Origin: Octopus bimaculoides
Taxonomy: Eukaryota
Direction: 5' to 3'
Assembly (NCBI RefSeq): GCF_001194135.2
Contig: NC_068985.1
Location: forward strand, 21,591,537-21,655,536
Length of the DNA: 64,000 nucleotides
The notes under the pieces were generated by a model. The model searched no databases and was not told the DNA's origin. It saw nothing but the letters and a program-made list of their open reading frames with translations. Positions 1,142 to 60,843 of this stretch are shown one piece after another (the stretch's first letter is position 1; each line of letters starts with the position of its first letter). Both the position numbers and the translations under genes were made by a program.

Positions 1142-1490
1142 CGGTCTCGCTTCCATGCTGGTGGCACGTAAAAAGCACCATTTGAGTGTGATCGTTTCCA
1201 GCTTCACCTTACTGGCACTCGTGCCAGTGGCATGTGAACAAAACATTGGACTGACTCCTGTGCAGGTGGCACCTAAAAAAACACCATTTGAGCATGGCTC
1301 TCGTGCCAGTGACACATAAAAAGCACCCACTACACTCTCGGAGTGGTTGGTGTTAGGAAGGGCATCCAGCTGTGGAAACTCTGCCAGATCAGATTGGAGT
1401 GTGGTGTAGTCATCTGGTTCACCAGTCCTCAGTCAAATCGTCCAACCCATGCTAGCATGGAAAGTGGACGTTAAATGATGATGATGATGA
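1142..1490 (+). mobile_element. RTE LINE 3' tail or RTE-tail-derived short element
   Basis: Matches the sequence that terminates the RTE body at ~33600-33863; ends in (TGA)n. Related copies at about 16660-16890(+), 26574-26965(-), 30995-31309(+), 34295-34530(-), 37534-37830(-), 40200-40415(+), 53098-53430(-), 58880-59070(-), 63823-64000(-). Confidence 0.8.
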
Positions 1491-2048
1491 ACCTAACTGT
1501 TTGAACCAGAGATACAAACTAGTGACAGTGACTGGATATAAACAGTTAATCTCTCATAATGTCTAATATCTTGTCAGCTATGCTATTTGTAAACTCCCAG
1601 ATAAAGCTGAAAGAAGAAAAAAGGTTGTCCTTACAGAATAGCTGTTTTTATTAAAGGATATTTTCACATAATAGTTGTTATTATTTTTTAATTTCAAGTT
1701 TCATCGAAAGCATTTTCATTGAATAAATTTCATTAAAATTATTTTTCAAAAATACATTCTTTTCCCAGTTTATTGGAAATTTAAATATTGCAGTAATATT
1801 TTTAATTTTATGAAGGCGGCAAGCTAGCAGAATTGTTAGCATACCAAGCAAAATGCTTAGTGGAATTTTGCCCATCTTTATATTCTGAGTTCAAATTCCA
1901 AGGTCGTCTTTGCCTTTCATCCTTTCATGGTTGATGAAATAAGTACCAGTCTAATCTGAAATTGCTGGCCTTGTGCCAAAATTTGAAAGCAATATTTTAA
2001 ACTTTTCACTCAAGTTTTAAAAGTATTATCAAAAATTATACATTCCAG

Positions 2049-2132
2049 GTTATTGATACAAATCTGCATTTAGAAAAATTATTTAATGTCTATGAAGAGG
2101 AAAAATCACAGATTTTGTGCCAGGCATTATGA
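2049..2132 (+). CDS. Terminal coding exon of the TK2/dNK-like kinase
   Basis: CAG acceptor at 2046-2048, phase 0 matching the upstream donor. Reads VIDTNLHLEKLFNVYEEEKSQILCQAL*, similar to the TK2 end VIEAD..MERMLELFEQNRDRIL. AATAAA at 2278-2283. Confidence 0.75.
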   Translation, partial: VIDTNLHLEKLFNVYEEEKSQILCQAL

Positions 2133-2433
2133 ATTATGCATAATACTCATGTCTGATAGTTTTGTGTCAACATATGATTATGTAATGTAAGTATTATTTT
2201 TTAATCAATGCATTTTATGACTAAAGACAATACAATATATATTGAATATAACAAATATACCATTCTGCATCTTGATAAATAAAGTATATTCAGCCTTCAA
2301 ATAAAATCCTAATCATCAAACTTATTGTTAATGGTAATTTGCATGTTAGTTGAAGGCCACAATCATAATCAATATACGCATCATCTGGTTTACTAATTGA
2401 TAAGAAATAATTTTATATTTGAGCTGTGAATAA

Positions 2434-2785
2434 GCACAGGCATGGTTGTGTGGTTATGAAGATGGCTTTGCAACCACATGGTTTTGGGTTCAGTCCCACT
2501 GCATGGCACTTTGGGCAAGTGTCTTCTATAGCCCTAGGCCAACCAATGCCTTGTAAATGAACTTGGTAGACTTTATGGAAGTTGTCATGTGTGTGTGTCT
2601 ACAACAGCATGTTTGTTCCCCACAGCTTGTTTACATCTCCATAACTTAGTGGTTTGGTATAAGTAACCGATTGAATAAGTACCAGACCTTGGAAAAAGGA
2701 TCAATTTGTTTGACTAAATATTTCAAGGTAGTGTCAAGCATGACCACAGTCCAATGACTGAAACAAGTAAAAGATAAAGGATAAA
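2434..2785 (+). mobile_element. tRNA-derived SINE, family 1
   Basis: Head with A/B-box-like motifs (TGGTTGTGTGG; GGTTCAGTCCC), central (GT)n, tail ending AATGACTGAAACAAGTAAAAGA. Related copies at about 4270-4425(-), 17335-17560, 25790-25930, 48168-48665 (interrupted), 53670-53815, 60585-61010(-), 61120-61500, 62490-62655. Confidence 0.75.
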
Positions 2786-5489: not shown

Positions 5490-6240
5490 CACCTTTTACT
5501 TGTTTCAGTCATTAGGCTGTGGCCATACCAACAAGGCAACTTTCCAATGACCTGTTGAGTAGGAGGGCACCGCGGGCACGAGCCCGGGTGAAAAGTTTTT
5601 AGTCAAATGTATCAACCCCAGAATTTTTTCTTCCTTTTTACTTGTTGCAGTCATGCTGGGGCACCATTTTGAAGAATTTTTAGTTGAATGTAGCAACCCC
5701 AGAATTTTTTTTTATGATTTTCAATCAGCACATGAAGTTAAGCCTAGGTCTTTTCATATGCTAGAAATAACAGCCAAATCTCTTGAAATTTTTTAATAAC
5801 TCCCTCCGTTATATTTTTTGGTTATTCTTTGTTTTTTTTTTTATATCTTCTAAAAATCTTTTTACCTGTTTCAGTCATTGGACTGAGGACATGCCTTGAG
5901 GAATTTTTAGTCGAATTTATTGACAGAATGTTTTTATTTTTACTTGTTGCAGTTATTAGACTGTGGCAACCACCTTGAAGAATTTTTAGATCGCTGTATG
6001 GAGCCCAGGAATTTTTTAAAAATCCTAATCAAACCACTTCTGTGATATATTTCGTTTTTCTTTTGTACTTGTTAAATCATTAGATTGCAGCCATGCTGGG
6101 CTAACCACCTTGAAGAATTTTTATAGTGAAATGTATTGACCCCAGAATTTTTTTTAGGTGATTTTCAGACAGCGCATGAAATTAAGCCTCGAAGATCTCT
6201 CCACATGCTAGAGATAACAGCCAAATCTCTTGAATTTTTT
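5490..6240. repeat. Imperfect tandem array built from SINE-tail fragments
   Basis: About five copies of a TTCAGTCATT..CCATGCTGGG..TTGAAGAATTTTTAG..CCCCAGAATTTTT unit, plus a duplicated ATGCTAGA(A/G)ATAACAGCCAAATCTCTTGAA block (~5715-5795 and ~6160-6240). Confidence 0.65.
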
Positions 6241-6869
6241 GGTTTTTAATTTCAAGTAAACAAAAACAGAAATTGCGGTTATAAAAAAAAAAAACAACTT
6301 TTATTTTCCAAAATTCCAATTATTAAGTAATCAAAAATAAGTTGAATAAAATAAACAGAACATAAGAGTCTTTACCACTCAGTATATATATTTTCTGAAT
6401 TCTAAGAAAAGGGAAAACATTTACTTCAAGAAATGTGCTTTACAAGTCGAAAACTTTCATCACCAGCAGCATCGTCATTATCTCAACTACCACCATTACC
6501 ACCGCCAAAACGGTAACCAGCTATAAAACCATCATTACCACCACCACCACATTCATCATTATCAAGCTAAGTAAAATCACGGCCATCCATACAAATAGGA
6601 ATGTCCTCTACGTTCGTCTCTCAGCTTAGGTGTCTTATTCTTGCGAGCTCGTGGGTGCTGGTTCCACTTAGAAGCGTCTGTGTTGGTACACAGAAAATGG
6701 GAGGTACACATACTCTTTACCTCCGCCCACTTCACATGATTGTTTTGTTTGCTTGAGTAACTATAATTCCCCATGTATAGATAAAAAACATGTTTAAAAA
6801 AAAAAGGAAGGCCTATAGTGCAACCAACCGCTAAGGTATCTTTGAAAACTGAAAGCAAATTTATGTTGA

Positions 6870-7953: not shown

Positions 7954-7990
7954 TATAAATAAAGCTGCACACGCCATTTCTGTCCTTTAC
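7954..7990 (+). promoter_or_regulatory. Putative core promoter of nucleolin copy A
   Basis: TATAAATA at 7954-7961 followed by pyrimidine tract CCATTTCTGTCCTTTAC at 7974-7990, 66 nt before the ATG. Confidence 0.5.
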
Positions 7991-8055
7991 GCAGAAGTTA
8001 CATACTCATTCACTTCGTTCAACTCACTCGAAGTTAATATTCAGAAGAAAGTGAA

Positions 8056-11000
8056 ATGGCTGGTAAAAAGAATAAGGAAAAGGTATGTTATTTTATTAGT
8101 TTTCTATTTTATTCAAGGATAATATCTTTTGAATATTTAATAAGCTGGTTAAAATTGAAATATACAACTTGAAAGTTAGCCAACTGGAGAGTCCACGTGT
8201 TCAAGCACATGTAATAAGGAACGAGACTGTTTCCAAATCTTTCGCCAACAGCAAATTAATAATTTCAAATTAAAAAAAGATCTCACTATAATATCAAGTA
8301 AATTGTCTTACGACATGAATTTTGCAGTTTTAGCCGTAAAATTATTTGATCAGCTGTGGAAGTTAAAAGATATTAAAACCTATTCCACGTGGTTAGTGAC
8401 CTTATCAAAAAACGAGAAGTGATTATTTAATCAAGTGCTGTTTATTTAATTTATTGAATTCTGTCTCCACTTTTGGGCTGAGCTTCGGAATAATTACCGC
8501 CTCACTCAAAAAGCTTATTTTTTCATAGAATCGTAATCTATTTAAACATCCAGAAAGTATTTTCGGAAGTAGTCAAAAAAAAAAAAAGCTACTTATGTAT
8601 TCCAAAATGGAGAAAGAAGCGAAGTTAATTTTTGCAGAATCGAAATGCCCCATATTTAAATTTTTAGAAATTAAATTAAAAGGTAACTGCCTGTTGTAAA
8701 TCTTAAAAGAGAAATATCGATATCTCCGTATTTATAGCCTATTTGAATTTATTAAAAATCTAAAAGTGACTTGAAAAATATTTTGTATAATCTAGACATT
8801 GGTGAAAGTGTGATGATATGGGACAAAAGTGGCGCAATTAAAATTGGTTATTGGTAATAAGGGAATGTGAAAAAAATAAATTTGGCATTTCTCAAAATCA
8901 GTAAATTCTTCATTACTTGGATTTTTAGAAATATATTTTTGTTGAAAAGGCGCCGCTGCCATAGCTGTTTTACGATTCTAATTTGTGTCATGGCTGGGGC
9001 GTCCACGTGTGTGAACTACGCAGAGTTGAATGGTGCGCTTGTGTTAGGGAGAGCCGCCTGCTTGACTGATTTCACATTAAACATTGCGGCGGTTATCGAT
9101 AAAATTGCGATTCAGACAAAAATATTGTTTCTGTGTTGTAGTGAATTAAGAATACATCACACTTTTTCTCATCGATTATTACAATATGTGTGAAATCGAC
9201 AATAGTAATTTTTTACTCGTAGACGTCAAGCTATGAAACGGATAACTGTTGAAACGAAGATCCCTAGTAGTTTCGAGTTCGGTTCCACTACTCACTAATA
9301 TGGGCAAGGGCAATTGTCCGTTTATAGTCTCTGGTCAACCGTTGTCATGTGAGCGAATTTGGTACGCAAAAGATCGACCTACATATATGTTTGTGCAGTT
9401 TCTATCGACTAAAGAGTAATTTGTTTGAAAAACCACTGCATCATAGCAAGGACGATCTCCATTAAATTGAAATTTTGTAACAACCAGGCGATCGGGAAAA
9501 TTTTCAGATTAACACTCGAACGATTTTCACTAGGGTTTTAGGGCCAGGGTTAGGGAATACCGTCCAAAACACCCTAGTGAAAATCGTGCGGGTGTTAATC
9601 TGAAAATTTATCGACGTTTGTTTCCGTATTGTAAGAGTAGATTGCATCGCATCTAATATGGTGCAATAGTGGGTTTACCTTAATGAAATTCCAGTTCACC
9701 ACGAGGTGGGCTTGTGAGAATTGAATTGGCTGCGGAGAAATTTATGTATTACAAAGAAAAAAATTCAGATGACACTTTAAGACTTGTGCTACAACATAAA
9801 GGTCTAATTACACGGATGCTCCAATAATTTAGTCTTTTCATTGAAGTTGATAATGGTGGAGCGAAAACAACTGCATTTATTCCAAAATCTGAGAAGTGCT
9901 TCAAAAGTTGTTTTTTTTATATTGATATAGTAGGGGAAAAAATTAATTCGTAATATGTATTTTTGTTTGGGCTATATTTGTTCAGTGCCCTACATAAGAC
10001 GCTAAAGATGTGTGGTTTGAGCAATCATTTTTAGGATGTTGATTGATCATATCAACGTTTTTCTCCCAAGTGTCATCTTGCTGGTTATTTTATTGTCCTG
10101 CATGCTTTCACGCATGCGCAACTAAAACGTTTCAAAACTTCCAGATGTCGGTGTGGGCATTCCGAAAGACAGGAATGACTTGGGAAATTGTTTTCAGAAT
10201 CGTGTAGTCTTGTCAAAAGAGTTACTTAGCTGGCGATTTTTGTTTCATTAGTTTTTAAGAAGCCAAATAAGATTTTTATATTTCCACTACTGTTGTTTCT
10301 AATTTTTAGTTGCACCACTTTTCTCTCATGTCACCGATATTTCTCAATGTCGCTGTTTTGGGGCTTTAGTTATTTCTGCTATGAACCAAGTTGATGGGAG
10401 ATTAGTAACTAAGTCAGTATCCACATTGACCAACCTTTGTCCGACCCATGATAGAAGTAGGAAAGTGGACGTGAAAGTAACGCTTTGATTCCCCTAAACA
10501 CTTCATTTTCTGTATTACATTCTGGCAAGCTAGAGTTCATCTTTGCTTTTCGTCCTTCCAGGATCAATTAGATTGGTGATCTTTCACTTGAAGATCATAA
10601 AGTGGAAGTGATGCAAATAGGCATTTAAACATTGATGCAATTAAAGTGAATGTTACTTGATATCGGTATTATAAACTCGAAAAGGTCCAAACATTCGTAC
10701 ATGACTGACAGTGAAAATTGAAAAGTCATCAAAAACATGGCTAAATATGAAATGGCCAAAGGAATTGTTATGATTCGTAACATTTTTTAAAATGGGTCCA
10801 AATAAGAATATGTAAACGGATACCTCCCTCACCTAAAATTTTTTTTTTTTTTTTTACGACATCCCACTTTTTAGGCGATGGAGATTGCTATTCTGAATTT
10901 TTTTTTCAAAAATGGCCAATTTCGATTAATCTCTTCATTTTTCCAGAATTTTTTTTTTTTTTGCGAGGCACGTATAAAAACTACGGAGATTATGATTCTG

Positions 11001-13393
11001 AAAAAAAAAAACATTTTAAAATTTCAATTCCCCCCTCCATCCTCAAGCAAGCTATTTACATGCTAGAGATAACAGCCGAAAAGGGTTTTGTTGAGAAGTG
11101 TGTTCGGAGATANNNNNNNNNNNNNNNNNNNNNNNNNNNNNNNNNNNNNNNNNNNNNNNNNNNNNNNNNNNNNNNNNNNNNNNNNNNNNNNNNNNNNNNN
11201 NNNNNNNNNNNNNNNNNNNNNNNNNNNNNNNNNNNNNNNNNNNNNNNNNNNNNNNNNNNNNNNNNNNNNNNNNNNNNNNNNNNNNNNNNNNNNNNNNNNN
11301 NNNNNNNNNNNNNNNNNNNNNNNNNNNNNNNNNNNNNNNNNNNNNNNNNNNNNNNNNNNNNNNNNNNNNNNNNNNNNNNNNNNNNNNNNNNNNNNNNNNN
11401 NNNNNNNNNNNNNNNNNNNNNNNNNNNNNNNNNNNNNNNNNNNNNNNNNNNNNNNNNNNNNNNNNNNNNNNNNNNNNNNNNNNNNNNNNNNNNNNNNNNN
11501 NNNNNNNNNNNNNNNNNNNNNNNNNNNNNNNNNNNNNNNNNNNNNNNNNNNNNNNNNNNNNNNNNNNNNNNNNNNNNNNNNNNNNNNNNNNNNNNNNNNN
11601 NNNNNNNNNNNNNNNNNNNNNNNNNNNNNNNNNNNNNNNNNNNNNNNNNNNNNNTCCATTAAAGAAAAAAAAAATTTAAGGGGGGGAAAGGGTTCCGGTT
11701 ACATACCTCCATCTGGACCTTTAAATGTTTAAACGTGACTATCTTATAAATAAGTTTTGCTTTCATATTTTCGTACTAGTGATAAATTATTTCGATATTG
11801 CATTATGGAGGGGAATGATTTTTTTCATTATTAAATTGATAATTCAGTTGGACCTTTTTATAACTCATTCGGGCATAACCCTTTGTTGATTTACCTCATT
11901 GGGCATTCTGCCATTTTAGATTGATAGATACAATTTGAGGGAGGTTTTTGGCTGCTACTTTTATAAAGTAGAGTGACTGTGCAGTGATTCCATTGGGCTC
12001 GATTTCGTTGCGGTGTTGCTTAATACGTGCCTAATTCATCCTTGTGATGAATTTGGCTGTCGTGGTTCCTTGCGTGTCGGTCCGTAATGCCATTGGCTCG
12101 AGGGGTATCGGAAATAAGCCTTTGGCTGCGATATCAGTTCGGTTTGGCCGTGTTTCGATAAAGGGTTACCGTGCAAACAAGTGGTTATCGAGTATTGCAT
12201 ATTCTGGATGCTGCAATGGAATTTCCTGTTTTGTGTGCAAGCTGGTGTCAACCTGGTCTTACAACAACACCCACTAACCAGTATTGTGAGTCTACGGTGA
12301 ATGCTAAGCTGCGCCATGAAAAGGGGTATGAGGTAATCATTATGTACTTTTCAAGTTAATAACTGTTTGTCATTGCACATTGCTCTGTTGTTTTATATTG
12401 AGTGGACATGCCATTTTAACCTTCTTGTACTTTAGCTGTTATGTAAATATCACACAAAAATATACCAAATTTTAAAGCGTTTCAGGATGTATCACAACCA
12501 GCAACTGTTCACAGAGTAATTGATTTTCAGATCATGGCCATATATTGTCTACAGTGGAAATTCCTCTAGTCCATGGGGTCACCAAACTACAGGCCACATG
12601 CCAGATCCAGCCTTCTGCCACTCTGTACCTATTGTGTAAGTGCTTGCAAAGAGAGTTCATTTGCCTCTGGTATGGCATCAGTGTTTGGAACAACTTCTGT
12701 CTAAGCAAACATTTTGAAAAGTAAAGTATGTGAAGTCAGCACATTGAACGAGGTTGACTGACAAGCATTTCCCTTGGTTGGATGCAGCAACTCCAAAGCA
12801 AATATTGATATTCTAGAAGCTAACCATGGGTTTCACAAATCTCACTAAGCTATTTTGCTGTTTAGTTTGTGAGATTCAGATATGTGTGTACTGGGTGTGA
12901 TATAGCTATCTTATTGCTATTATCGCCTTCTTCGATAACTTTTTGAGAAATAAATATTTTGGTTGTCTTTTTTTCTGTGTATTAATTGTGTTGAGCAAAA
13001 TAGTTACATGGCCCATGCTTGTTATTCCCTCTTATCTGGCCCCCTGTGTAAAAAGTTTGGTGATCCCTGCTCTAGTCAAGTGAAAATGTTAAACATTGCC
13101 TAATTTATATTATGATGGAAATACATTCTCTTGTCTTGAAACAAGATTTGAAGTATTTCTTGTGATAAAAAAACTGATTGCAATCCTGTGTAAATAAAAA
13201 AAAAAATTCTGCAGTTGCCAAAGGTACAAGCTAAAGTTTGAGAAAGTGAAATGGCTGTTGGGCTCAACAAGTTAATGCCTTCATAGATTTGATAATGAAC
13301 AGTTAAGTTGTGATTGGTTTAATGCAAGAAGCATTAAGAATTAAAAATTTTAGCACTTTGGCAAATTTAGATACAGGAAGCACTATATATATG

Positions 13394-13485: not shown

Positions 13486-16400
13486 TGTGTGTATGGTGAG
13501 ATTAAAGGTGACAAAATAACTTGGGTTCCTTATGCTTTATTTTAAGAAAATTTTATATATTGAATATATATTACAAAATTACTTAATGCTTCTGGTATTT
13601 TAGTCTCAACAAATGTTATGTATCTTGTAGAACCTCTTTTATGTACTATTTCAAATTGTTAATGCTTAAAATGACTTCTGTATATTTAATAAATTTTGAA
13701 TAGGACACTTATTTCTTACTCTTTTTTTCTAAAGCATGAATTTTCAAGAGCCTTAGGATGTGGCTACAAAATTTTTTGCCTTCATATTTTCGTACTAGTG
13801 ATAAATTATTTCGATATTGCATTATGGAGGGGAATGATTTTTTTCAATATTAAATTGATAAATCAGTTGGACCTTTTTATAACTCATTCGGGCATAACCC
13901 TTTGTTGATTTACCTCATTGGGCTTTCTGATACTTTTATATTTTAAATATAACTTTGACCATAGTGTCTTGATGTCTTTATAGTTGTATTGTTTCCTTGG
14001 TGTGCTAAACTAAAAGAATATTCTACATGGATTAAATTATATAAATTGCATAGCTACCTGGGCATTTAAATTTTTTTTTATGTAAAACAACAATTACAAT
14101 TTGTCAATGTGGCAGTTCATATTATGAATGCAAATACCAAGACATTTGCCTTCATTTAATTTTGAAGATAAAGAATAACTTCATTATTAAACTAATATTT
14201 GGGACATTTAACATGAAGTGGGAAGTTTGTGTCACAACTCAGGCAGGTTTGTATTAAAAGGGTTAAATTTTTAGGAAAAATAATTGTAAATAAAATTACA
14301 TTTTATAGTGTTTTTCAAATGTAAACATTGTATGTTTTCCAAGTTTTGATCCAGCAGAGTATACAATTTAATGTCTGTTGGCAGTCATTTTATCCTGAGT
14401 TCTGAAAGTTCCCAAAATTTACCCAGTTGCTGTATATGCTCTACTTCTGTGTTGGTTTCTATTTCAATTAATAATGTTTCTTTGTTTTAGGCTTCCAAAA
14501 AGACTGTTAAACCTGCCAAACCTGTAGAACCTGAAGAATCTTCAGAGGAGTCGTCTTCAGAATCAGAAATGGAAGTTGTGAGTACCTTTTTTTTTTTTTT
14601 AACACAAAACCTATCAAAGATTAGATTCGGTGTGCTTGAGTACAGATAAATCCTTGAATTAAATTTCATATTTTTATTTTAAAATAATTTCTCTCTGAAA
14701 CCTAAGAAGGTAGAATTACTTGGCAACCCAGTCCTGTCTTTTCTCCTTAAGTCATTTGCCATTTTTTAATAATAACCATAACTTATTCAATCACCTTCTG
14801 ATCAACATTGCTCCCTGTCTTTATCAACAATGTCTACTTCACTCACTTTGTCACCACTATCCACTTGCAAGAATTTGTACTTGTTCCTTCCAACTTTTTG
14901 TACATAACATAAATTGCCTCTGCATCTGTATAAACTCTGTAGATCTGTCTTGGGGTAGCTCTAAATTTAACTCACGACAGGTTGTATAGGTTGGTGGCTT
15001 GGTTGTAATTTGAGACCTGAAAAGTTTTTTTTCTTGCAGTTAGTGGATTGTTACACATGGACATGTTTACATGTGATTAAGAAGCTGGTTTCCTGACCAT
15101 GTAGCTTTTGGTTCAGTCCAACTACTTGGCACTTTTAGTACTTGTCTTCTATAGCACTGAGTTAAGTACTTTGTGAGTGGATTTGGTTGATGGAATATGG
15201 AGAAAGCTGTTCATGTATGTGAGTGCTCTTGCTTGTCATTGGTTTGAACAAGTATTGTTGGCTTTCAGTCTTTGATGTTTTGCTATGGCAAAATATTACC
15301 TTGCTTGTAATTCAATCTGATCCATGAATAAAGATGTATGCTGAAACAATTTTTTCTGATAGAAAAAATTTTTTTTTTGTTTTTAGGAAGCTCCAGTTGC
15401 TACAAAAGCTAAGAAGCAGTCAAAACAAAGCAAAGTTGCTGGTAAGATTTGATTTATATAATATTGTAATTGGTGTATAGACATGTTTTTATTGGGCTTA
15501 TGTTAGGGAATCAATTCACTCACTTCTCTGTAGTCTATCCTGGCAATGATGTTTAGGGTTTCCTGTAGGTTTTTTTTTGTTGTTTTTTTAACAAAAAAAA
15601 GCTAAATAACAGAAATATGTGAAGTGCTGTGCATTTTGTGTTTGTAATAAATGCCAGGAAGTTTGAGGTTAATCCTTTAGTGTTCAGATTACTCTGTCAA
15701 ATGTAATGCTTATTTATTCATATTGCTTTGAATTAATCTCGCATTATCCTCTGACTGAGATTTCAATGATGTGATTGCTTATTTTCATAATGACGTTGGT
15801 AAATGTGAGATACTGGATATAGTTAGTTTGAACATAGAACAAGTAGACTAATTAGGGTTGGATATGGCCAGTTTAAATGCTAAACGGTTAAATAAATGCC
15901 CATACTGGACTTGATGTACAAATTCATGAAATTTAAAAATGTTCTACCTTTAATAGCTATAATCTATTTATATCTGCTTTATTTTTGTAATAAATATTTG
16001 TTTTTGCTTTGTACAATAGCAAAGAAAAAGAAGGAAGAATCCAGTGACAGTGAAGAAGAAGAATGTAGTGAGGAAGAGGAAAGTGATAGTGAGGAGGAAG
16101 AGGAAGTAGAAGATAAGAAGAAAAAAGTAAAAAAAGAGACAGTAAAAGAGGAAAAGAAAGCAAAAAAAGAAGAAAAAGCCAAAAAGGTTGCTGAATCAGA
16201 TGATTCTGAAGAAGATTCTGATGAATCTGAAGAAGAATCAGAAGAGGATTCTAGTGAGGAAGATTCTAGTGAAGAAGGTATGCAAATCCTCAAAATATAT
16301 CTTGAATAAATTTTGTTTTGAAATGTTTTCTGATATTGACTAAAAACATCTTTTTACTTTATAGAATCAGAAGAGTCTCCTAAGCCAAAGCTCAATGGAA

Positions 16401-19400
16401 ATGCTGATGGTATTTAATTTTGGTTTTCTTTCTCAATTACCATTTTTGTACAGTTCATGTTTCCCATATGTATATAATTTAGAATTTAATATTGGTTTTA
16501 TAAACAGCTATAACCTTTTGTTGTGTTTTGGTAGTCATTACGCTAATAGTAATAACATGTACTGGTGTGTGTTATTGGCATGATAGCCGTCGCAAGGTAC
16601 AATGTGTGTATGTTATCGTTATTGGTGTAATGAGCTTCCCAAAACACGGGATTTGTTTCAAAATGTTGAGCCTCATGACAGACCTTTGGCGATATGCTGT
16701 CCTTGTGAAGACTTGTCAAGCCAAGTGAAATCATAGTCATGGCCATTGCCAGTGGTGTGTAAAAAAAAAAAAAAAACACCCATTACACTAGGAAGGGCAT
16801 CCAGGGGTAGAAGCCATGCCAAATCAGACTGGAACCTGGTAAAGCCCTCCGGTTTGCCAGCGAGGAAAGTGGCCATTAAATGATATGTGTAGTATGATTT
16901 TTTTATGGAAAACAGCTATGTACACTTTTTATTTGTGAGGTAGTTAGAAATAGAAACTTAATTACATTGTTTGTATCTGTGTAATCATTTTGTCTTCAAC
17001 AGGTTCAAAAGAAGCTAAGAAGCGTAAAACAGAGCCAGAAAATGGTAACGATGCCAAGAAAGCTAAAGTTGATGGTAAGATTTACTTTGGTTTGTGTGCA
17101 TGCTCCAAAGTTTTGTGGTTAGAAGTTCTACAGCTTCTATCAGGAAAAGCATTCTGAGACACACTTTCATATCTTAATGTAATAATGTGGCTGTTTATGA
17201 GCATACCTTGTTTCATTTATTATCCTGAACAAAAATTACTTAAGCTTGCTTCACTACTACGTGGTTCTGGGCTCAGAGCCAACCAAATCCTTGTGAGTAT
17301 TCGGTGAATGGAAGCTGAAAGCCTGTTTATATATATATATATATATGTGCGTGTGTGTATCTCCCTCCATTCCCCCCTGTTACTGCACGACAACCAGTGT
17401 TGGTGTGTTCCTGTAACTTGGCAGTTCAGCAAAAGAAACCAATAAAATAAGTACTAGCCTTTAAAGAATAAAACCTGGGGTTAGTTTATTAGACTAAAAC
17501 CCTTAAAGGTGGTGCTCCAACATGGCTGCAGTCTTATGACTGACACAAGTAAAATATTAAATTACTTAATCGGCTTTTAATGCCACATCCCAAACGAATT
17601 GATCCAGTGATCAATTATGGGATCATTTCATTCCTGCTTGGAATCACTTTGTAATTATGCTTTGAAGAATCTTGTGAATTAAAGTCTGGTATCAAACTGC
17701 ATGGTGGAGATGTATTGCTCACATTATCATCTCCAAGATCTTATCTCTTATTAAGCCCTTAGCATTCAGATGTTTGCCAAGTATGTTTATTTATTAGCAC
17801 CATTTTGAATTAATCACGTGGCTTTGAGATTTTAGGGTAGGTAGAATATTTTGGCCAGGATTTTCTAAAATAAGACTAAGCATTGCTTCTTGCTTGGAAA
17901 ATTCCTTTGTTGTCATTTCTACTTCCAAGCAAACTTCTCTTGAATTGCAGCTATGTGTGATCCAGGACAAGGTGGCAAATGTGTTTACTTGTGGTACAGG
18001 AGTTGAAATTGATAGAAATAATAAATTTGATAAATGATAAGTTACCACTGACAATATTGTTGGTTATTATGAAAGAAAGCTGATGTTGAATTTTTCAATT
18101 ATTCCTTTTCAGAGTCTGTAACAGTTATGTGCAGAAATATTCCTGAGGAAGTGACTGCTGAGGCCTTTGAGAAATTTCTTAAGAAGAAAGGAATTGAAGT
18201 CTCATCTGTTCGCAAGCGTGAGGACAGAGCGTATGTATTACAATTTCTTGTTAGCTGTTTTACATTTTATAGGCTTTTTGTTATGCATATTCACTTTGTA
18301 TTGTTTTATATTCACTCATTTATATTGCTTTCTGTTATAGATTTGCCCACATTGACTTGGCTAATCCAGATGATCTTGATAAAATTTTAGCAATGCAAAA
18401 TCTTGACTATAAAGGGTCTGCACTGACATTTGAGAAAGGTCGGCCCAAGAGACCAAAGGGAGAAAGAAACACGGGTACGTTGATTTTGTTTGTACAATAA
18501 GAACTCGAGGGAAAGAAAATCATAGATACAATGTCCTGTTGGTAGACTGAACAGTACACAACAGTTTATGCTTTTTTTCCCCAGGTGATGAATCAAACAC
18601 ACTATTTCTGAAAAATCTACCTTATGATGACTCAGAAGATAGTCTTAGAAGCAAACTGATGGAGATATTTCCTGAAGCACAAAGTGTCAGAATTCCCTAT
18701 AAAGGAGATTCACATAAGGGGTAAGATTACAATATCTTTAATTTACAGTGTGCCATTTATATAATCATTTGCTATGATTGTCTTTAGTGTTTTAAAAAAA
18801 ACAAACAAAAGTGTGCTTATTTTTTGTGCTATAGTCTGTTTTGGCCCTTTTGTTACCAAAAGCGCCAGTAGTAACCCATTCATGTTTTAATGAGAATTTC
18901 GGCATTAATCTCACTACATTCTTATGGTTTCATTTAAATACCCAACATAATGGCAGATAGTTACACTATCTGCCATTATGTTGGATATTTCAGCACTGAG
19001 TTTGAGTTCAAAGTATTTTCAAAACGAGACTGAAAATATATGGCAAAAGCCACATCTTTGGTAATGAATTGAGTATTTATATGTCCGAAAGTGAAACAAT
19101 TTGGCCAGTTCTTAGGACGGTATTAGACCTATCCAATCTAAAGAAACAAAACCATTAGAGTGTTTACTTTTTTCTTTGAATCAATTACTGCAGGAATTAT
19201 TAAACAGGGGAAAAAAAAAAAGTTGTGGCTTCCCACAATACTTAAAAGAAAGTTACATCCAAGCACTTCTAGGAGTATTGTGAATGTGTATATATAGATA
19301 TACATGCATTTGATTTATAATTGCTTTTTTTTTTTTTTTTACCTATAAGGTGCTTGACAGGGTTTGAATTGTGAATCACTATGTTTCTGTGTATAGTTTG

Positions 19401-39700: not shown

Positions 39701-42700
39701 ATGCTTGTGTTAACATGCATGGAATCTTCACCCTCAACTGTTTACCACCATTCTCCACACATGTAATTCTTCATTGACTTTTATCAGTTTCACTCCCATC
39801 CATCTCTAATGCTGCCCTTTAGTCACTCTCTTTTACCCAGTTTTATTACTTGACACTGCTCATGCTGTTCTCTATTCAATCTCTTTATCAATAACAACAA
39901 ATAGTCATCAGTGTCTCTCTTCTATTACTCCTTCCCCAACCATTCTATTACTGTTTCACTCCATCACAATCATACTACCTCTCTCTCCTCTTTCAACCTC
40001 TTGATGAACGCATCTAATCACACTCTTGGTTATGTTTGTTATGAAAGAACAGAGACTACATAGAACTCTTTAGTTTTGCAAGGTATAAGACAACTTTTCT
40101 AATGCTGGTACTACAATAAAATACACTTTTATAAACACACTATAAAGTGATTGGATAACGAAGACAACACAGAGTAGAGAGGATTTTAGTCATACCAAGT
40201 ACATAACCTCTCTGATGCTGGTCCCATGATAAAATGCACCCAGTACACCTAAAATAGTTGGTGTTGGGTAAGGCACCCTGCCAGAGGAAGCCCCCCCCCC
40301 CCAAATGAGATGTACAAGCAAGATAATATCTAGGCATGTAGTGATTCTGAGACAATGATGATATGTCCAAACCTTGACAACATGGAAAGGGAGGCATAAA
40401 ATAAATGATGATAAGTATATTAATATTTATTAACTTTGAAATAAGAAAACAAAAATAGAATATATGAACTTACAGCATCCATTTCTTCTGGTTCTGAAAA
40501 AGACTCCTCATTAGATTCTTCAGCTTCAGCTGACTTTTTTGGATTCTAGTTCAAATTATAAAAGTCAGTAATTGAAACAAATATTCAAACTCAAGTACAT
40601 CATAGAGAAAATATAAGCAAACAAAATAAGTATATGTTAAATCTCTGAACGAGGTATTAAGTATATTTTGTATAAAATTATTGTACCCCAACTGAATGCT
40701 TCACAAAAGCCTATGATACTTCTGAACTGCAGTAGCCTTCTAAGCCTATTTCTCACCACAGCATTACTTATCCAGCGATTCTATGTTGTTTTTTTTTTAA
40801 TATATATACTAGATCTGAATTCATTACCGCCAAGAGGTTCTGGTCTCACTATTAGAGAACTCGTGTTTAAGGGACTAATTAGTATTGAATTTATTTATCA
40901 AATACTCTCTAGCGTTGGTCGATTTCCTACCACGAAAGCATTTAACACGTTCTGCTCTTGAATCTTGCTTCCACATGATTGGCAAAGAACGTCATAAAAT
41001 CGTGTTTTCCATAGCAATACTTTTTAAAACATATTTAATGAAAGTTCATCTCTTAACAGACTACGCTGGAAGCATCTCAATCTTATGTTCACCGCCCTTC
41101 CTCCACATATCTCCCCAAAATATAGAAAATGCAGAGAAATTATTTCAATAAAACATCACTAATACTACTATCTACACACTGATCAAGATCGGTTGGACCT
41201 TATGATAGTCATGAAACTCATCAGCATTAGAAAATAAAATTCACTAAAATACGAAGTGACCATAGGCAATATTAAATAAAATGAAAAAAAAAAACATGAA
41301 AAATATTTCTTTGTCGTTAAGTATGAATTATTAATGAACGAGACAAATATAATAGTTCATAAGCTGAGAATAACTGCTTAAAAATTCAGTAAGATGCCTG
41401 AATTTCGTGAACTATTTTAAGGATCAACCAAACATTTTACAATGACAAACGATATATTATTTTAACACAATGGTTAACAGATTCTTTGTGCTAGAAAGAA
41501 TATCACAGTTCGAGAAAAGGGTTTATGAAAAGAAAATATGCAACATTGATTGCTCAAAATTTTCAGTTAATTTCACGTTTTGAAAATCTTATCTTCGTTA
41601 CGTTTCTTGTTATTTTAATTGCAAATGTCATGGTTGATAAGACATCCTATTTCGATTCCTTGCTCACTTATCTGAAGTGGTTTGAGACAAGAAAACCAGA
41701 AGTAAACACAACTCATAAGCTACCCAAACAGACGTATCTTCGTATTTGGGGCCCACATTTTAATGTTACATCAAAAGTTAACAAATTGAAATAAATAAAT
41801 AAAAATTGATATATAAACAGGCTATTCTACAAGATGTATCACTCACACAATTGCGTAAACTTTTTGATACAATGGTGTGTTGTACAATAAATAGTTTGTG
41901 CTAACAGAACGAACTCTCGTGAGAATAATTCTGACCATGACAAGAAATCATTTCTCATTCATGACAAAGCAATTAAGATAACCGAGCAACGTGCAATGAC
42001 AGACAACATAGAATTTAACAGTATATAACTGAAAAAGTGCATCATGTTTACCTCATACCCCTTTTCATGGCGCAGCTTAGCCTTCACCGTAGACTCACAA
42101 TACCGGTTAGTGGGTGTTGTTGTAAGACCAGGTTGACACCAGCTTGCACACAAACCAGGAAATCCATTGCAGCATCCAGAATCATGTGATAGTCGATAAC
42201 CACTTGATGTTTGCACAGTAACCATTTATCGAAACACGGCCAAATCAAAACGATATCGCAGCCAATGGCTTATTTTCAGTAGCTCTCGAGCCAATGGCAT
42301 TACTGACCGACACACGAGGAACCACGACAGCCAAATTCACCGCATGGGTGAAAAGACGCACGTACCAAAGCGACACCATAATTGCGAAAATTTACCGAAT
42401 CGAGATCTTGTTTTGTTTAATCAGTATAATGTAATGATTAATCATTATTACAAATTAGATCCTCTAATTCTGAACAAGACCTAAATAATGATATAATAAA
42501 AGTCTTCCACTAATCGCAACGATAAAAGCTTTAAACGTTATTGTTTCTAAAGGGTAATTAGAGAAAAAAATATTAGAATTTCATAACCATATGTACTCAG
42601 GAATGCATTTTATGTAGTAATATAATAATACACAAAGAAGTCCTAACTTCTTAAATCTATCGCCGTATTACGTTCTGCTAATTTCAGTTGACCTATATTA

Positions 42701-45572: not shown

Positions 45573-48500
45573 ATGGCTGCTAAAAAAAATAAGGTATGTT
45601 ATGTTGGTTTCCTCTTTTATTTAGAGACGAGATATTTTGAATATATCAATTTATTTATAAGCAGGTTAGAATTGCAATATAAAACCTGAAATCCAAGCAA
45701 ATAGACGGAATCCACATGTTTAAGAGTATTTATAGATGGGAGTGCATCTCTCACAAAGAAATCGCAGCAAAAATAACGATCGGTAAAGCTAGTTTTGAGA
45801 AAATTCAATTTACCTAATGGCAAATACATAACTATTTGTTATAATTAAAAATATCGGTTTTTTTTTTAACCTTAATAGTTTTCACTGCTTTATCTGATTG
45901 CTGTTTCATTGAAATAGAAAAGGCATATCAATTTTAAACATGATCCAGTTGATAAATAGGCCATTGTTGAAGTAAGAAATGTATGGTGGTACTACTTGAT
46001 CCACGAGTTTGAATTGATAAAGATGACATATAAACTTGAAGATTACCACATATAAATATATATGATCAAAGGAAATTAAACATAATGCTGCAGAGATTTA
46101 AGAAGTTAAATCTACTTCTACTTCATTATGCATTAGCTCTAAAGTATAACAACTTTATTTTAAAAAATGAGATACTTTTATTGTCCATCCGTAAATATTC
46201 ATTAAAAAACAATTTTATAGACTTTTTATCGTCGCGATTAGTTGGTTGAGAGTTTTTTTTTTTACTAGATCAAGCATTTTAGACTTAGAATTTACAATAT
46301 AATTTGTAATAATGATTAATCATTACATTATACTGATTAAACAAAAACAAGATCTCGATTCGGTAAATTTTCGCAATTATGGTGTCGCTTTGGTACGTTC
46401 CTTTTTTTCACCCATGCGGTGAATTTGGCTGTCGTGGTTCCTTGCGTGTCGGTCGGTAATGCCATTGGCTCGAGGGGTACCGAAATATAAGCCATTGGCT
46501 GCGATATCGTTTTGATTTGGCCGTGTTTCGATAAATGGTTACCGTGCAAATGATTCTGAATGCTGCAATGGATTTCCTGGTTTGTGTGCAAGCTGGTGTC
46601 AACCTGCAACAACACCCACTAACCAGTATTGTGAGTCTACGGTGAAGGCTAAGCTGCGCCATGAAAAGGGGTATGAGGTAATCATTATGCACTTTTCAAG
46701 TTATATACTGTTAAATTCTATGTTGTCTGTCATTGTACGTTGTTCGGTTATCTTAATTGCTTTGTCATGAATGAGAAATGATTTATTATTATGGTCAGAT
46801 TATTCGGTCAAACTAAAGGGTTTGACCCGGTGGGAAATAAAAAATTAAAATATTCTAATAGGTGTAAAACAACTTGCTGCGAGCGAATATGAAGAAGAAA
46901 AAAGCGCGCGCTCGCGAACAGGGGTGGGGGTGGGTAGAGGCCTCGGAACATTCGCATCCTGAATGTTCCGAGACGCCTCACCGGAGCCAAGAAACAAAAG
47001 AAAGATAGTGTAATAGATGTAAAGCAACTTGCTTTGAATGAATATGAAAAAAAAAAAAAAAAAAAATGCGCTCCCGCGAAAGGCGGGGTGGGTAGAGAAC
47101 TCGGAATATTCACATCGTCACACATCACACACTCAGACACACACATACATACATATTCGTTCCCAGCAAGTTGTTTTACACCCATTAGACTATTAAAAAA
47201 AAATTTTTGTCACCGGGTCAAACACTATAATTCAGAGGCCATATCATGACGATATGTGACGATGTGAATGTTCCGAGTCCTCTCCCCACCCCGCCTTTCG
47301 CGGGAGCGCATTTTTTTTTTTTTTTCTCACATTCGTTCAGAGCAAGTCGTTTTACATCAATTACACTATTTTTCTTTTGTTTCTTGGCTCTGGTGAGGCG
47401 ACTCGGAACATTCAGGATGGGAATGTTCCGAGGCCTGGTCAAACCCTTTAGTTTGCCCGATTAGGTCTTACCCCATTTTGTTCTGTGAGCAGAAACATTG
47501 TATAGAAAGGGTAAAAAATGTATGAATGTAGACAAGATTGTATTTTGTGTATACAATGTTTATGTCAATTTAGTAATTTTTAACGTAACATTAAAATCCA
47601 GTGCTTTTTGCAAAGAAACAGATTTGTTTGCCAACTTTTGATTAGTTTCTGGAGGTATCTGTCGTGACTGAACTTAAAACTAATCGTCTTGTTTTCTATC
47701 ATCTTAGAATTGATTTATATGTGAGCAATAAAGCGAAATACGATGTCAATCGGCCATGACATTGCAATTAAAATAACAAGAAACGTAAAAGAGATTAAAA
47801 TTTCAAAATGGTCCAGATGGACTATATGTAATCTTTTTTCAGAATCGGAATCTCCATAGCCTAAAACGTGGGATTCCGTAAAAAAAAATTAATAAATAAG
47901 GGGGGGAAGGTTCAGATTACATATAGTCCGTCTCTACCCCACGTTTTGTGGTTATGGCGGATCCGATTCTGAAAAAAGAAATTTCAAAAATCGCATTTTC
48001 AAAATTTCACCCCGCCCCCAATCATTTTTCACTTGTTCCGGAAATTTTTCTTTTGCGAAATAGGTAGAAAAATACAAAGATTATGATTCTGAAAAAAATT
48101 TTTGTATCTAAAATTTCAATTTTTCAACAATAACAAAAAAAAAAGATACCTATAGATTATATCATAGGCGCAGGAGTGGCTGTGTGCACCAGGTAAGTGG
48201 AAGCTAAAAACAAGGGAAAGAAAAAGCAAGGGATCTACCCTGGTGGTCGGATGCCTATCCTTCAGGAAAGCCATTACAAATTGCATCTGTAATGAGCAAA
48301 GCTTTAATCGAACATTGTAAATATAATCAAACTATTATTGTATATTTAAAATTGTAAATATTTAATCGATACAGCTACTTCACCCCTTTTATGTTTGTCT
48401 GTCCTTGTTCGTCCCCTCTTTGTAACGCCTTGGCAAATATTATGAAATAAAGTAGCTTGCTTACCAACCACATGGTCCTGGGTTCAGTCCTACTGCGTGA

Positions 48501-60808: not shown

Positions 60809-60843
<35 letters not shown>

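What the first reader, a model, noticed from the sequence alone, without database searches (positions are those of the whole stretch)
12048..12358. ~300-nt intron-1 element conserved far more strongly than the coding exons in all three nucleolin paralogs
Seen: the element occurs at 12048-12358 (+), 42029-42339 (-) and 46420-46703 (+), always sense in intron 1. A vs C identity is 59/60 and 95/97 nt in two blocks, against 94/118 (~80%) for RRM1 exon 7. Copy A's surrounding intron does not align with B/C by eye. Indels in the middle are not all multiples of three. It is CpG-rich in a CpG-poor background, and I could not match it to any snoRNA, snRNA, RNase P/MRP or telomerase motif I know. Known: ultraconserved intronic elements in RNA-binding-protein genes often mark autoregulatory poison or decoy exons. 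Inference: an undescribed nucleolin control module (regulatory exon, structured intronic RNA or enhancer) retained through two duplications.
Basis: partly seen in the sequence, partly recalled or inferred. Interest (0 to 1): 0.9.

Follow-up and report, generated by a model that had tools for sequence, protein, structure and literature searches.

The report
Conserved intron-1 regulatory module in octopus nucleolins
A ~300-base non-coding block in the first intron of all three Octopus bimaculoides nucleolin genes is real and kept by selection, and it looks most like an internal promoter plus untranslated first exon rather than a structured RNA, though no transcript data were available to prove this.

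Summary
The window is Octopus bimaculoides and carries three nucleolin paralogs: A on +, and B on − head-to-head with C on +. One copy of the element sits, in sense, in intron 1 of each gene. The copies differ by 4-10%, while the RRM exons differ by ~20% (dS 0.55-0.71, dN 0.11-0.17). Between O. bimaculoides and O. sinensis/O. vulgaris, copy A is 4.8% diverged against 11.2% for its flanking intron (p=5.5e-4). The copies group by paralog, so selection is acting, not only gene conversion.

It is not a known or structured RNA. Rfam finds nothing, folding z-scores run from -0.3 to +2.1, and there are no snoRNA boxes and no tRNA-like head.

The anatomy has three parts:
- a CpG-dense 5' half with two NF-Y-type CCAAT boxes 29-30 bp apart;
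- a short linker that tolerates indels;
- a nearly invariant ~128-nt 3' half that ends exactly at a good splice donor (GAG|GTAAKC), with no good acceptor upstream.

My best reading (~0.37) is an alternative internal promoter plus non-coding first exon that bypasses the ATG exon. The rivals are a regulated or poison exon, an intronic enhancer, and an unstructured intronic RNA. No transcripts or deeper cephalopod orthologs could be retrieved, so the mechanism is inferred.

The parts
12048..12176 (+). Copy A, module 1: the CpG-dense 5' half (promoter-like). It carries an NF-Y-type CCAAT box at 12090-12098, read on the opposite strand. A second box about 30 bp downstream is intact in O. sinensis/O. 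vulgaris and in copies B and C, but is mutated to CCTTTGG in O. bimaculoides A.
12177..12204 (+). Copy A, variable linker. This is the only indel-prone stretch: a 25-nt deletion in copy C, and 3-nt and 1-nt indels between A and B. If the promoter reading is right, the transcription start would fall here or just downstream.
12205..12332 (+). Copy A, module 2: the nearly invariant 3' half and putative untranslated exon. It contains the conserved uATG at 12315-12317 (GCCATGA). The last 50 nt are 62% purine, like real exon ends.
12333..12338 (+). Copy A, conserved splice-donor-like site gag|GTAATC at the 3' edge of the invariant block. A second conserved donor-like site, att|GTGAGT, lies at 12286.
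12339..12400 (+). Copy A, decaying conserved flank downstream of the donor.
42044..42339 (-). Copy B core: module 1 42339-42211, linker 42210-42179, module 2 42178-42052, donor 42051-42046. CCAAT boxes at 42260-42268 and 42289-42297.
46420..46685 (+). Copy C core: module 1 46420-46549, linker 46550-46556 (25-nt deletion), module 2 46557-46677 (6-nt deletion), donor 46678-46683. CCAAT boxes at 46462-46470 and 46492-46500.
8056..8082 (+). Gene A ATG exon (MAGKKNKEK), upstream of the element. An acceptor-like site lies about 66 nt upstream of the ATG. The equivalent exons are at 43247-43227 (B) and 45573-45593 (C).
14491..14577 (+). Gene A exon 2, the exon the putative element exon would join. 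It ends with a conserved ATG in GAAATGG context (MEV...), the start codon of annotated isoform X3 of gene C. The equivalents are C 52271-52360 and B 40545-40474.

Best explanation
The element is a cis-regulatory module of the nucleolin genes, maintained by selection and lying in the unmethylated-looking (CpG-normal) 5' domain of each paralog. I think it is most likely an internal, alternative promoter with its own untranslated first exon.

The proposed mechanism has three parts:
- Module 1 (~130 bp) is CpG-dense and carries two NF-Y-type CCAAT boxes 29-30 bp apart. It would act as the proximal promoter.
- Transcription would start in or just after the indel-tolerant linker.
- Module 2 (~128 nt, almost invariant) would be the first exon. 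It ends at the conserved donor GAG|GTAAKC and would splice to exon 2.

Such transcripts skip the short ATG exon. They carry a conserved upstream AUG (GCC AUG AAA AGG GGU AUG AG|...). The main ORF would then begin at the conserved AUG in GAAAUGG context at the end of exon 2 (MEVEAP...). The result is either a nucleolin lacking the first ~35 residues or a translationally damped mRNA.

What is shown: the conservation, the selection, the motif content, the donor, the lack of RNA structure, and the existence of an annotated MEVEAP-start isoform for gene C.

What is inferred: the transcription start, use of the donor, and the functional consequence.
For: 1. Selection.
- Between paralogs the element is only 4-10% diverged, against dS 0.55-0.71 and dN 0.11-0.17 in the RRM exons.
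- Between copy-A orthologs it has 14/292 mismatches against 152/1356 in the flanking intron, Fisher p=5.5e-4.
- 238 of 264 gap-free core columns are invariant across four sequences, and the copies group by paralog.

2. Promoter-like 5' half.
- The three module-1 regions are the three most CpG-dense 200-bp windows of the 64 kb, and they lie in broad CpG-normal 5' domains.
- 5 of the 13 RRCCAATSR matches in the window fall inside the elements, as pairs 29-30 bp apart.

3. Exon-like 3' half.
- The near-invariant block ends exactly at a donor that scores in the top 1-2% of intronic GTs and above 8-13 of 26 real donors.
- Conservation starts to decay from donor position +5.
- The last 50 nt are 62% purine, like real exon ends (0.65 +/- 0.06) and unlike introns (0.49).
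- The only conserved acceptor-like AG with a pyrimidine-rich run inside the element is weak, below 24-25 of 26 real acceptors. A first exon needs no acceptor.

4. Annotation. Gene C has an isoform (XP_014779559, P0007) that starts at MEVEAP, that is, without the ATG exon. The exon-2 ATG and its GAAATGG context are conserved in A, B and C.

5. Not a structured RNA.
Against: - No transcript, CAGE or junction evidence could be obtained.
- The current annotation of gene A holds only standard-start isoforms. The hypothetical element-derived and MEVEAP-start products of gene A are not in the protein collection.
- Isoform X3 of gene C could equally arise by skipping the short ATG exon, which has its own acceptor-like site.
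- No conserved initiator motif was found by eye in the linker.
- Untranslated first exons are not usually this invariant.
- CCAAT boxes and CpG density also fit an intronic enhancer.
- A donor in the top 2% is expected by chance about 0.4 times among the 21 conserved GTs of the element.
- The deep branch between A and B/C carries very few changes (4 sites) compared with the recent branches (5-7 each). Some past gene conversion is therefore possible.
Confidence: 0.37

Rival explanations
1. RNA-level splicing control. Part of module 2 would be a regulated cassette, 'poison' or decoy exon, using the acceptor at 12241 and a donor at 12286 or 12333. Including or engaging it gives an unproductive mRNA. 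This would set nucleolin dosage, possibly through nucleolin or another RNA-binding protein binding the invariant sequence.
For: - Both donor-like sites and the AG at 12241 are conserved in all five sequences.
- Inclusion from the phase-0 ATG exon gives an in-frame TAA (CAC TAA) in every copy. The putative exon lengths are 44 or 91 nt (38 or 85 nt in C), none a multiple of three. This is worked out from the sequence.
- The 6-nt deletion in C keeps that frame.
- About 128 nt are extremely invariant, and conserved intron follows the donor.
- The sequence before the donor is purine-rich.
- A MEVEAP-start product is what an annotator would call on a stop-containing 5' variant.
Against: - The acceptor is poor (score 1.0-3.0). 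Between 7% and 13% of random intronic AGs score as well, and it falls below 24-25 of 26 real acceptors.
- Conservation is strongly asymmetric: ~190 nt upstream of the acceptor but only ~60 nt past the donor.
- The upstream half is CpG-dense with CCAAT boxes, which an RNA-level element does not need.
- No nucleolin poison exon is reported in the searched literature.
- In-frame stops and non-multiple-of-three lengths are expected by chance.
Confidence: 0.22
2. A purely DNA-level intron-1 enhancer or promoter-proximal element that boosts transcription from the upstream promoter. First-intron elements of highly expressed housekeeping genes work this way. The donor-like site would be coincidental.
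For: - The element lies in the CpG-normal 5' domain of each gene and is the CpG/GC peak there.
- It carries paired NF-Y-type CCAAT boxes.
- No RNA structure is detected.
- No transcript evidence exists for exon use.
- A top-2% donor can occur by chance among 21 conserved GTs.
Against: - About 128 contiguous nearly invariant bases, over a tree of roughly 1.3 substitutions per synonymous site, is denser constraint than clusters of transcription-factor sites usually show.
- The invariant block stops within a few bases of the donor.
- The sense strand before the donor has an exon-like purine bias.
Confidence: 0.2
3. A stable intron-derived non-coding RNA co-expressed with nucleolin: a divergent snoRNA or scaRNA-like RNA, or a sisRNA. 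Vertebrate nucleolin introns host U20, U23 and U82 (from my own knowledge).
For: - By prior knowledge, conserved blocks in vertebrate nucleolin introns turned out to be snoRNAs.
- The element is always in sense orientation.
- It is ~300 nt long with fairly well-defined ends.
Against: - No Rfam family matches at gathering thresholds anywhere in the window. At E<=10 the only hit on the element is a 15-bit chance hit.
- MFE z-scores are +1.0 for the whole element and -0.3 to +2.1 for the halves on either strand.
- RNAalifold finds a single compensatory pair out of 88.
- By inspection of the five-sequence alignment there is no conserved D box (CUGA) and no ACA at a plausible 3' end. The C-box-like GTGATGA occurs only in copy A.
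- The deletions in copy C remove parts of the predicted helices.
Confidence: 0.07
4. No function of its own. The similarity would reflect gene conversion among the paralogs, or independent insertion of a mobile element.
For: - The B-C similarity block is wider (540 bp at 89.5%) than expected from B-C dS of 0.545, so local homogenisation between the inverted B and C 5' regions is plausible.
- The deep A versus B/C branch has only 4 substitutions in gap-free columns, against 5-7 on the recent terminal branches.
Against: - Copy-A orthologs share A-specific states and indels.
- The element is significantly less diverged than its own flanks between orthologs.
- A-C divergence (6.4%) is below the local neutral ortholog divergence (~10%), even though A and C were already distinct before the species split.
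- Exons 1 and 2, a few kb away, are not homogenised.
- There are only three copies in the 64 kb, none elsewhere in ~57 kb of O. sinensis/O. vulgaris sequence, no tRNA-like head, and edges that decay rather than stop.
Confidence: 0.07

Closest known systems
Alternative internal promoters with non-coding first exons in CpG-island, NF-Y (double CCAAT box) housekeeping or cell-growth genes
   Same: The element has a CpG-dense block in an unmethylated-looking 5' domain and two consensus CCAAT boxes about three helical turns apart. A downstream segment ends in a splice donor. An annotated isoform lacks the upstream ATG exon.
   Different: No start-site evidence exists. The putative exon is far more conserved than typical 5' UTR exons. 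The resulting mRNA would carry a conserved upstream AUG and lose the normal start codon.
Ultraconserved poison exons of SR-protein, hnRNP and TRA2B genes (autoregulatory alternative splicing coupled to NMD)
   Same: The host gene encodes an RRM protein. The non-coding block is more conserved than the coding exons. It would introduce an in-frame stop if included, and it has conserved donor-like sites.
   Different: The acceptor is weak. Conservation is asymmetric, and the upstream half looks like promoter DNA. Conservation is shown only within the genus Octopus and its paralogs, not across phyla. Neither inclusion nor NMD sensitivity has been shown.
Conserved intronic blocks of vertebrate nucleolin genes (snoRNAs U20, U23, U82)
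   Same: Conserved sense-strand blocks inside introns of nucleolin genes.
   Different: No snoRNA boxes, no Rfam match and no stable or covarying structure. At ~300 nt it is also much longer than a single snoRNA.
First-intron transcriptional enhancers of highly expressed genes
   Same: It lies in intron 1, close to the 5' end, in a CpG-normal domain, and carries transcription-factor-type motifs.
   Different: It contains an exceptionally long invariant stretch that ends at a splice donor.

Membership tests
Alternative promoter + untranslated first exon | Transcription start sites map inside the element (CAGE, 5'RACE or RNA-seq 5' ends) | not testable with these tools
   No transcript data could be reached. 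ORF-based look-ups and searches found nothing.
Alternative promoter + untranslated first exon | Proximal-promoter sequence features (CpG island or unmethylated domain, core or proximal motifs) | tested here: met
   The module-1 regions are the top three CpG-dense windows, inside CpG-normal 5' domains. Paired NF-Y consensus boxes lie 29-30 bp apart. No conserved initiator was identified.
Alternative promoter + untranslated first exon | A splice donor ends the exon and no acceptor is required | tested here: met
   gag|GTAATC (A, C) and gag|GTAAAC (B, O. sinensis) score 6.9-8.4, in the top 1-2% of intronic GTs. The only conserved upstream AG with a pyrimidine-rich run is weak. Actual use of the donor was not tested.
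Alternative promoter + untranslated first exon | An mRNA isoform lacks the upstream first coding exon | tested here: inconclusive
   Gene C isoform X3 starts at MEVEAP, but its 5' exon is unknown and simple exon skipping would also explain it. No such isoform is recorded for gene A.
Ultraconserved poison/cassette exon (AS-NMD) | A functional acceptor and donor flank the exon | tested here: inconclusive
   The donor is good. The acceptor at 12241 scores 1.0-3.0, below 24-25 of 26 real acceptors.
Ultraconserved poison/cassette exon (AS-NMD) | Inclusion introduces a premature stop or a frameshift | tested here: met
   An in-frame TAA is present in all copies. The putative exon lengths of 44 or 91 nt (38 or 85 in C) are not multiples of three. 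This is weak evidence because it is likely by chance.
Ultraconserved poison/cassette exon (AS-NMD) | An NMD-sensitive inclusion isoform exists and responds to the protein's own level | not testable with these tools
   This needs RNA-seq with and without NMD inhibition, plus CLIP or overexpression.
Intron-encoded snoRNA/scaRNA | C/D boxes with a terminal stem, or a hairpin-H-hairpin-ACA architecture | tested here: not met
   By inspection of the alignment there is no conserved CUGA, a C-box-like motif only in copy A, and no ACA at a conserved 3' end. No Rfam hit.
Intron-encoded snoRNA/scaRNA | A stable, conserved secondary structure | tested here: not met
   z-scores run from -0.3 to +2.1. One compensatory pair out of 88.
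Mobile element (SINE/other) | Many dispersed copies at unrelated sites, with structural hallmarks | tested here: inconclusive
   Only the three homologous copies occur in 64 kb, and only one each in L001 and L002. No tRNA-like head. A whole-genome copy count was not possible.
Gene-conversion tract without selection | Copies group by species rather than by paralog, and orthologs diverge at the neutral rate | tested here: not met
   The A orthologs share A-specific states. The element is 4.8% diverged against 11.2% for its flanks. The B and C orthologs were not obtainable, so B-C conversion remains open.

The most novel reading that the evidence does not exclude
The element is a dosage-control switch shared by the paralogs. 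Nucleolin, or a partner protein, would bind the invariant, unstructured module-2 RNA or the module-1 DNA. That binding would set the balance between productive mRNAs carrying the ATG exon and uORF-bearing or unproductive mRNAs initiated or spliced at the element. All three paralogs would then be cross-regulated through one conserved sequence. This would be an autoregulatory circuit not described for nucleolin in any animal.
Probability: 0.12. Interest if true: 0.75.

Novelty: new member of a known kind. Interest (0 to 1): 0.5.

Why it matters
Nucleolin is a central ribosome-biogenesis and RNA-binding protein, and no conserved cis-regulatory module, alternative promoter or autoregulatory exon has been described for its gene.

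A non-coding block more constrained than the RRM exons, kept in three paralogs whose synonymous sites are ~0.6 apart, marks a sequence that matters to how these genes are expressed.

If it is an internal promoter or leader exon, octopus nucleolins are made from two kinds of mRNA with different start codons and a conserved uORF. If it is a regulated exon, the autoregulatory logic of RNA-binding proteins would extend to nucleolin.

Either way it is a short, well-defined target for RNA-seq junction analysis, CAGE and reporter assays. As it stands it is an interesting but unresolved conserved non-coding element, shown only within the genus Octopus.

Tried and rejected
**Known RNA families.** An Rfam gathering scan of the whole window gave 0 hits. 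A permissive scan of the element gave only a 15-bit chance hit to snoJ33.

**Structured RNA.** All tests were negative or uninformative: the single-sequence fold of the whole element and of its halves on both strands, and RNAalifold.

**Coding potential.** Open frames exist in several frames, but the indels (1, 3, 25 and 6 nt) and the frame-changing 1-nt insertion in O. bimaculoides A rule out a conserved ORF.

**Transcripts or other species carrying the element.**
- Exact look-ups of spurious ORFs across the element found nothing.
- An exhaustive HMMER search with the 93-aa antisense ORF gave one meaningless hit.
- A concatenated six-frame plus N-terminus query gave nothing. That search also failed to recover known identical N-termini, so it is a weak negative.
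- Two metagenome scans with invariant 22- and 26-mers gave 0 hits.

**B and C orthologs in O. sinensis/O. vulgaris.** The word-indexed protein search did not return them.

**Gene B's annotated 580-aa product.** I tried to rebuild it to see whether its 5' exons use the element. I abandoned this because its acidic exons are divergent and its last exon lies in an assembly gap.

**Long-range complementarity.** No 9-mer complementarity between the element and its own pre-mRNA is conserved in all three genes.

**UCGA motif clustering.** I recalled this motif as nucleolin's ECM binding motif and wondered whether it was enriched. Its density is no higher than in other CpG-rich stretches of the window.

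**tRNA-derived SINE head.** None found.

**Element-derived N-terminus for gene A.** The ATG at 12216 is in frame through the donor into exon 2, but the resulting product is not in the protein collection. The ATG is GTG in O. sinensis/O. vulgaris.

**Literature.** I found nothing on nucleolin poison exons, intron-1 promoters or cephalopod conserved non-coding elements at this locus.
Full report
**What is there.** The window is Octopus bimaculoides. A query built from the RRM exons at 18-20 kb matches XP_014779553/4 'nucleolin-like' at 99%.

The window holds three nucleolin paralogs. I mapped genes A and C exon by exon by exact spliced alignment of the annotated proteins:
- Gene A is on the + strand: ATG exon 8056-8082, exon 2 14491-14577, last exon 21184-21221.
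- Gene C is on the + strand: ATG exon 45573-45593, exon 2 52271-52360, last exon 61955-61992.
- Gene B is on the − strand, head-to-head with C: ATG exon 43247-43227, exon 2 40545-40474, RRM exons about 30.9-28.7 kb.

The element occurs once in each gene, in sense, in the intron between the ATG exon and exon 2. The copies are at 12048-12340 (+), 42339-42044 (−) and 46420-46685 (+). An invariant 19-mer from it occurs exactly three times in the window, against 0.01 expected.

RRM1 exon 7 is 94/118 between A and C, and there is a 97-nt A/C block with no more than two mismatches.
- Mismatch-only identity of the element is 93.6% (A-C), 90.1% (A-B) and 95.6% (B-C).
- Apart from dispersed repeats, the rest of A's intron 1 does not align with B or C.
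- Weak homology runs ~35-60 nt past each end, to about 12012-12400, so the edges decay rather than end abruptly. Between B and C the similar block is wider, 541 aligned columns at 89.5%.
- The CpG statement needs a qualification. The 5' halves of the three copies are the three most CpG-dense 200-bp windows of the 64 kb. But each lies in a broad CpG-normal 5' domain: A about 6.0-12.3 kb, B/C about 40.8-44.1 and 45.0-50 kb. The gene bodies have CpG o/e of about 0-0.4.

**Is it selection?**
- On 678 nt of RRM coding sequence, dS is 0.71 (A-B), 0.61 (A-C) and 0.55 (B-C). Between O. bimaculoides A and its O. sinensis ortholog it is 0.117. dN between paralogs is 0.11-0.17. So the element (4-10% diverged) is more conserved than even the non-synonymous sites of the RRMs.
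- I retrieved the orthologous gene A loci of O. sinensis (L001) and O. vulgaris (L002). Both are collinear through the introns, and their element copies are identical to each other.
- Between O. bimaculoides and O. sinensis the core has 14 mismatches in 292 positions (4.8%). The flanking intron has 152 in 1356 (11.2%), Fisher p=5.5e-4.
- Neutral divergence varies across the window: 4.5-6% upstream of gene A, 9-11% in its introns, 12-18% downstream. The element is therefore clearly low for its own locus but not unique in the window.
- The two A orthologs share A-specific substitutions and indels against B and C. In gap-free columns, 4 sites support this grouping and 1 conflicts, and there are further differences in the linker. 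So there has been no A-to-B/C conversion since the species split.
- A-C divergence (6.4%) is below the local neutral ortholog divergence, even though the two lineages were already distinct. That requires purifying selection.

Two caveats apply.
- The deep branch separating A from B/C carries only 4 substitutions in gap-free columns, against 5-7 on the recent terminal branches. That means either earlier conversion or a recent relaxation of constraint. Relaxation is plausible for gene A, whose coding dN/dS is 0.64 between orthologs against ~0.24 between paralogs.
- The wide B-C block suggests local homogenisation between those two inverted neighbours.

**What it is not.**
- No Rfam family reaches threshold anywhere in the window. 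A permissive scan of the element yields only a 15-bit chance hit.
- The element folds no better than shuffled sequence: z = +1.0 for the whole, and -0.3 to +2.1 for the halves on either strand.
- RNAalifold finds one compensatory pair among 88, and the deletions in copy C fall inside the predicted helices.
- By inspection of the alignment there is no conserved D box and no ACA tail. The C-box-like GTGATGA is present only in copy A.
- There is no tRNA-like head.
- Indels of 1, 3, 25 and 6 nt exclude a conserved ORF.
- No complementarity to the gene's own exons or splice sites is conserved across the three genes.

**Anatomy.** The element has two modules separated by the only indel-prone stretch.
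- Module 1 (A 12048-12176) is CpG-dense. It contains two matches to the NF-Y consensus RRCCAATSR, 29-30 bp apart, read on the strand opposite to the gene. Five of the 13 such matches in the 64 kb lie in the three elements. The second box is mutated in O. bimaculoides A but intact in O. sinensis/O. vulgaris.
- The linker (12177-12204) carries a 25-nt deletion in C and small indels between A and B.
- Module 2 (12205-12332) is almost invariant. It ends at gag|GTAATC (gag|GTAAAC in B and in O. sinensis/O. vulgaris).

I scored splice sites against a matrix built from the 26 real donors and acceptors of genes A and C.
- This donor scores 6.9-8.4. That is in the top 1-2% of intronic GTs and better than 8-13 of the real donors. 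Variable positions begin at donor position +5.
- A second conserved donor-like site, att|GTGAGT, lies at 12286.
- The only conserved AG with a pyrimidine-rich run inside the element (12241) scores 1.0-3.0, below nearly all real acceptors.
- The last 50 nt before the donor are 62% purine, like real exon ends (0.65 +/- 0.06) and unlike introns (0.49).

**Annotation clues.**
- The gene ranges returned for the public assemblies are CDS ranges, since 45573 is the A of gene C's ATG.
- Gene C has an annotated isoform (XP_014779559, P0007) that starts at MEVEAP, the ATG at the end of exon 2. It therefore lacks the ATG exon. That ATG and its GAAATGG context are conserved in all three genes.
- This is what a transcript starting at the element and spliced to exon 2 would encode. 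It is also what skipping of the ATG exon, or a stop-containing cassette, would give. The ATG exon is itself preceded by an acceptor-like site, very strong in gene C.
- For gene A, exact look-ups show that the current annotation has only the two standard-start isoforms, XP_052824159 and XP_052824160. Hypothetical element-derived and MEVEAP-start products are absent.
- Gene B's annotated 580-aa product has its start codon at 48473(−), ATGTGGTTG|gtaagc. This lies inside a dispersed repeat in gene C's intron 1. I could not reconstruct that product.

**Best explanation and rivals.**

I favour an internal alternative promoter plus untranslated first exon (confidence 0.37). Five observations support this:
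- the CpG-dense 5' half with CCAAT boxes;
- the linker that tolerates indels;
- the invariant 3' half ending at a good donor;
- the absence of a good acceptor;
- the location inside an unmethylated-looking 5' domain.

Its mRNA would bypass the normal start codon. It would carry a conserved upstream AUG (GCC AUG AAA AGG GGU AUG AG|) and use the exon-2 AUG.

The rivals are:
- A regulated, poison or decoy exon (0.22). It is favoured by the extreme invariance, the two donors and the in-frame stop. It is disfavoured by the weak acceptor and the promoter-like upstream half.
- A pure intron-1 enhancer (0.20).
- An unstructured stable intronic RNA (0.07).
- Conversion or a mobile element without function (0.07).

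None of the transcript-level steps is shown. Every route to RNA evidence or deeper orthologs failed with the available tools.

**Comparison with known systems and novelty.**
- The element works most like a CpG-island, NF-Y-type alternative promoter with a leader exon.
- It resembles the ultraconserved poison exons of SR, hnRNP and TRA2B genes in being a non-coding block more conserved than the exons of an RRM-protein gene.
- It fails the defining tests for a snoRNA or scaRNA, which is what conserved nucleolin intron blocks turned out to be in vertebrates (my own knowledge).
- I found nothing in the searched literature describing such an element in nucleolin.

I rate it a new member of a known kind, a conserved cis-regulatory module or alternative 5' exon. 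Interest is moderate (0.5). It is real and selected and has an unusual degree of constraint, but it is shown only within one genus and its mechanism is unresolved.

Noticed in passing
window 1488-6413: The region upstream of gene A lies downstream of a dNK-family gene that ends near 2.1 kb by comparison with L002. It is only 4.5-6% diverged from O. vulgaris, and many 150-nt windows are 96-98% identical. That is more conserved than the nucleolin exons, despite strong CpG depletion (o/e 0.1-0.2) and no obvious ORF. It may be a long conserved 3' UTR or an unannotated transcript.
   Followed up: partly
window 18113-20372 (gene A RRM exons) vs L001: Gene A evolves fast between O. bimaculoides and O. 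sinensis: dN/dS is 0.64, against 0.22-0.26 in paralog comparisons, and the RRM region is only 82% identical at protein level. This points to relaxed or positive selection on this paralog.
   Followed up: partly
window 41923-42460 vs 46805-46297: Genes B and C form a head-to-head inverted duplication. Around the element they share a 541-column block at 89.5% identity, far more similar than their coding dS of 0.545 predicts. Between the ATG exons and the elements the similarity is 67-78%. This suggests local gene conversion between the inverted 5' regions, or wider constraint.
   Followed up: partly
window 48465-48473 (-): The annotated 580-aa product of gene B has its start codon (ATGTGGTTG|gtaagc) inside a dispersed repeat in intron 1 of gene C, about 5.2 kb upstream of B's usual ATG exon. 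Either the B and C transcription units overlap head-to-head, or the model is an artefact.
   Followed up: partly
window 7990-8055, 45500-45572, 43248-43300(-): The short ATG exon of each gene is preceded by an acceptor-like site (ttttacag|AGAA in C, score 11.7). An untranslated exon and the main promoter therefore probably lie further upstream. No paralog-conserved upstream promoter block was detected.
   Followed up: partly
window 11755-11938 and 13774-13958: A 184-bp direct repeat (93% identical) brackets the part of gene A's intron 1 that contains the element. It is also present in O. sinensis and absent from B and C.
   Followed up: no
window 1295-1489, 26574-26873, 31009-31308, 33645-33862, 37534-37833, 53100-53390, 63828-64000: A dispersed ~170-300-bp repeat family (75-95% identical, both orientations) occurs in and around the nucleolin genes. 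A second family occurs at 2434-2598, 4283-4434, 48450-48595, 60840-61010 and 62500-62670.
   Followed up: no
window 8900-9700 and 46800-47440: There are further CpG-dense stretches in intron 1: in A between the ATG exon and the element, and in C just downstream of the element. The one in C contains internal inverted repeats (46938-47126 vs 47436-47251, 90%). Their nature is unknown.
   Followed up: no
window 20905-21084: The older gene A models (XP_014779553/4) splice out most of the GAR exon through a donor inside the glycine/arginine repeat (20937). The current models (XP_052824159/60) use the donor at 21084, and I reconstructed them exactly.
   Followed up: yes
window 1-64000: No Rfam snoRNA, or any other RNA family, reaches threshold in any intron of the three nucleolin paralogs. 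By contrast, vertebrate nucleolin genes host U20, U23 and U82 (my own knowledge).
   Followed up: partly
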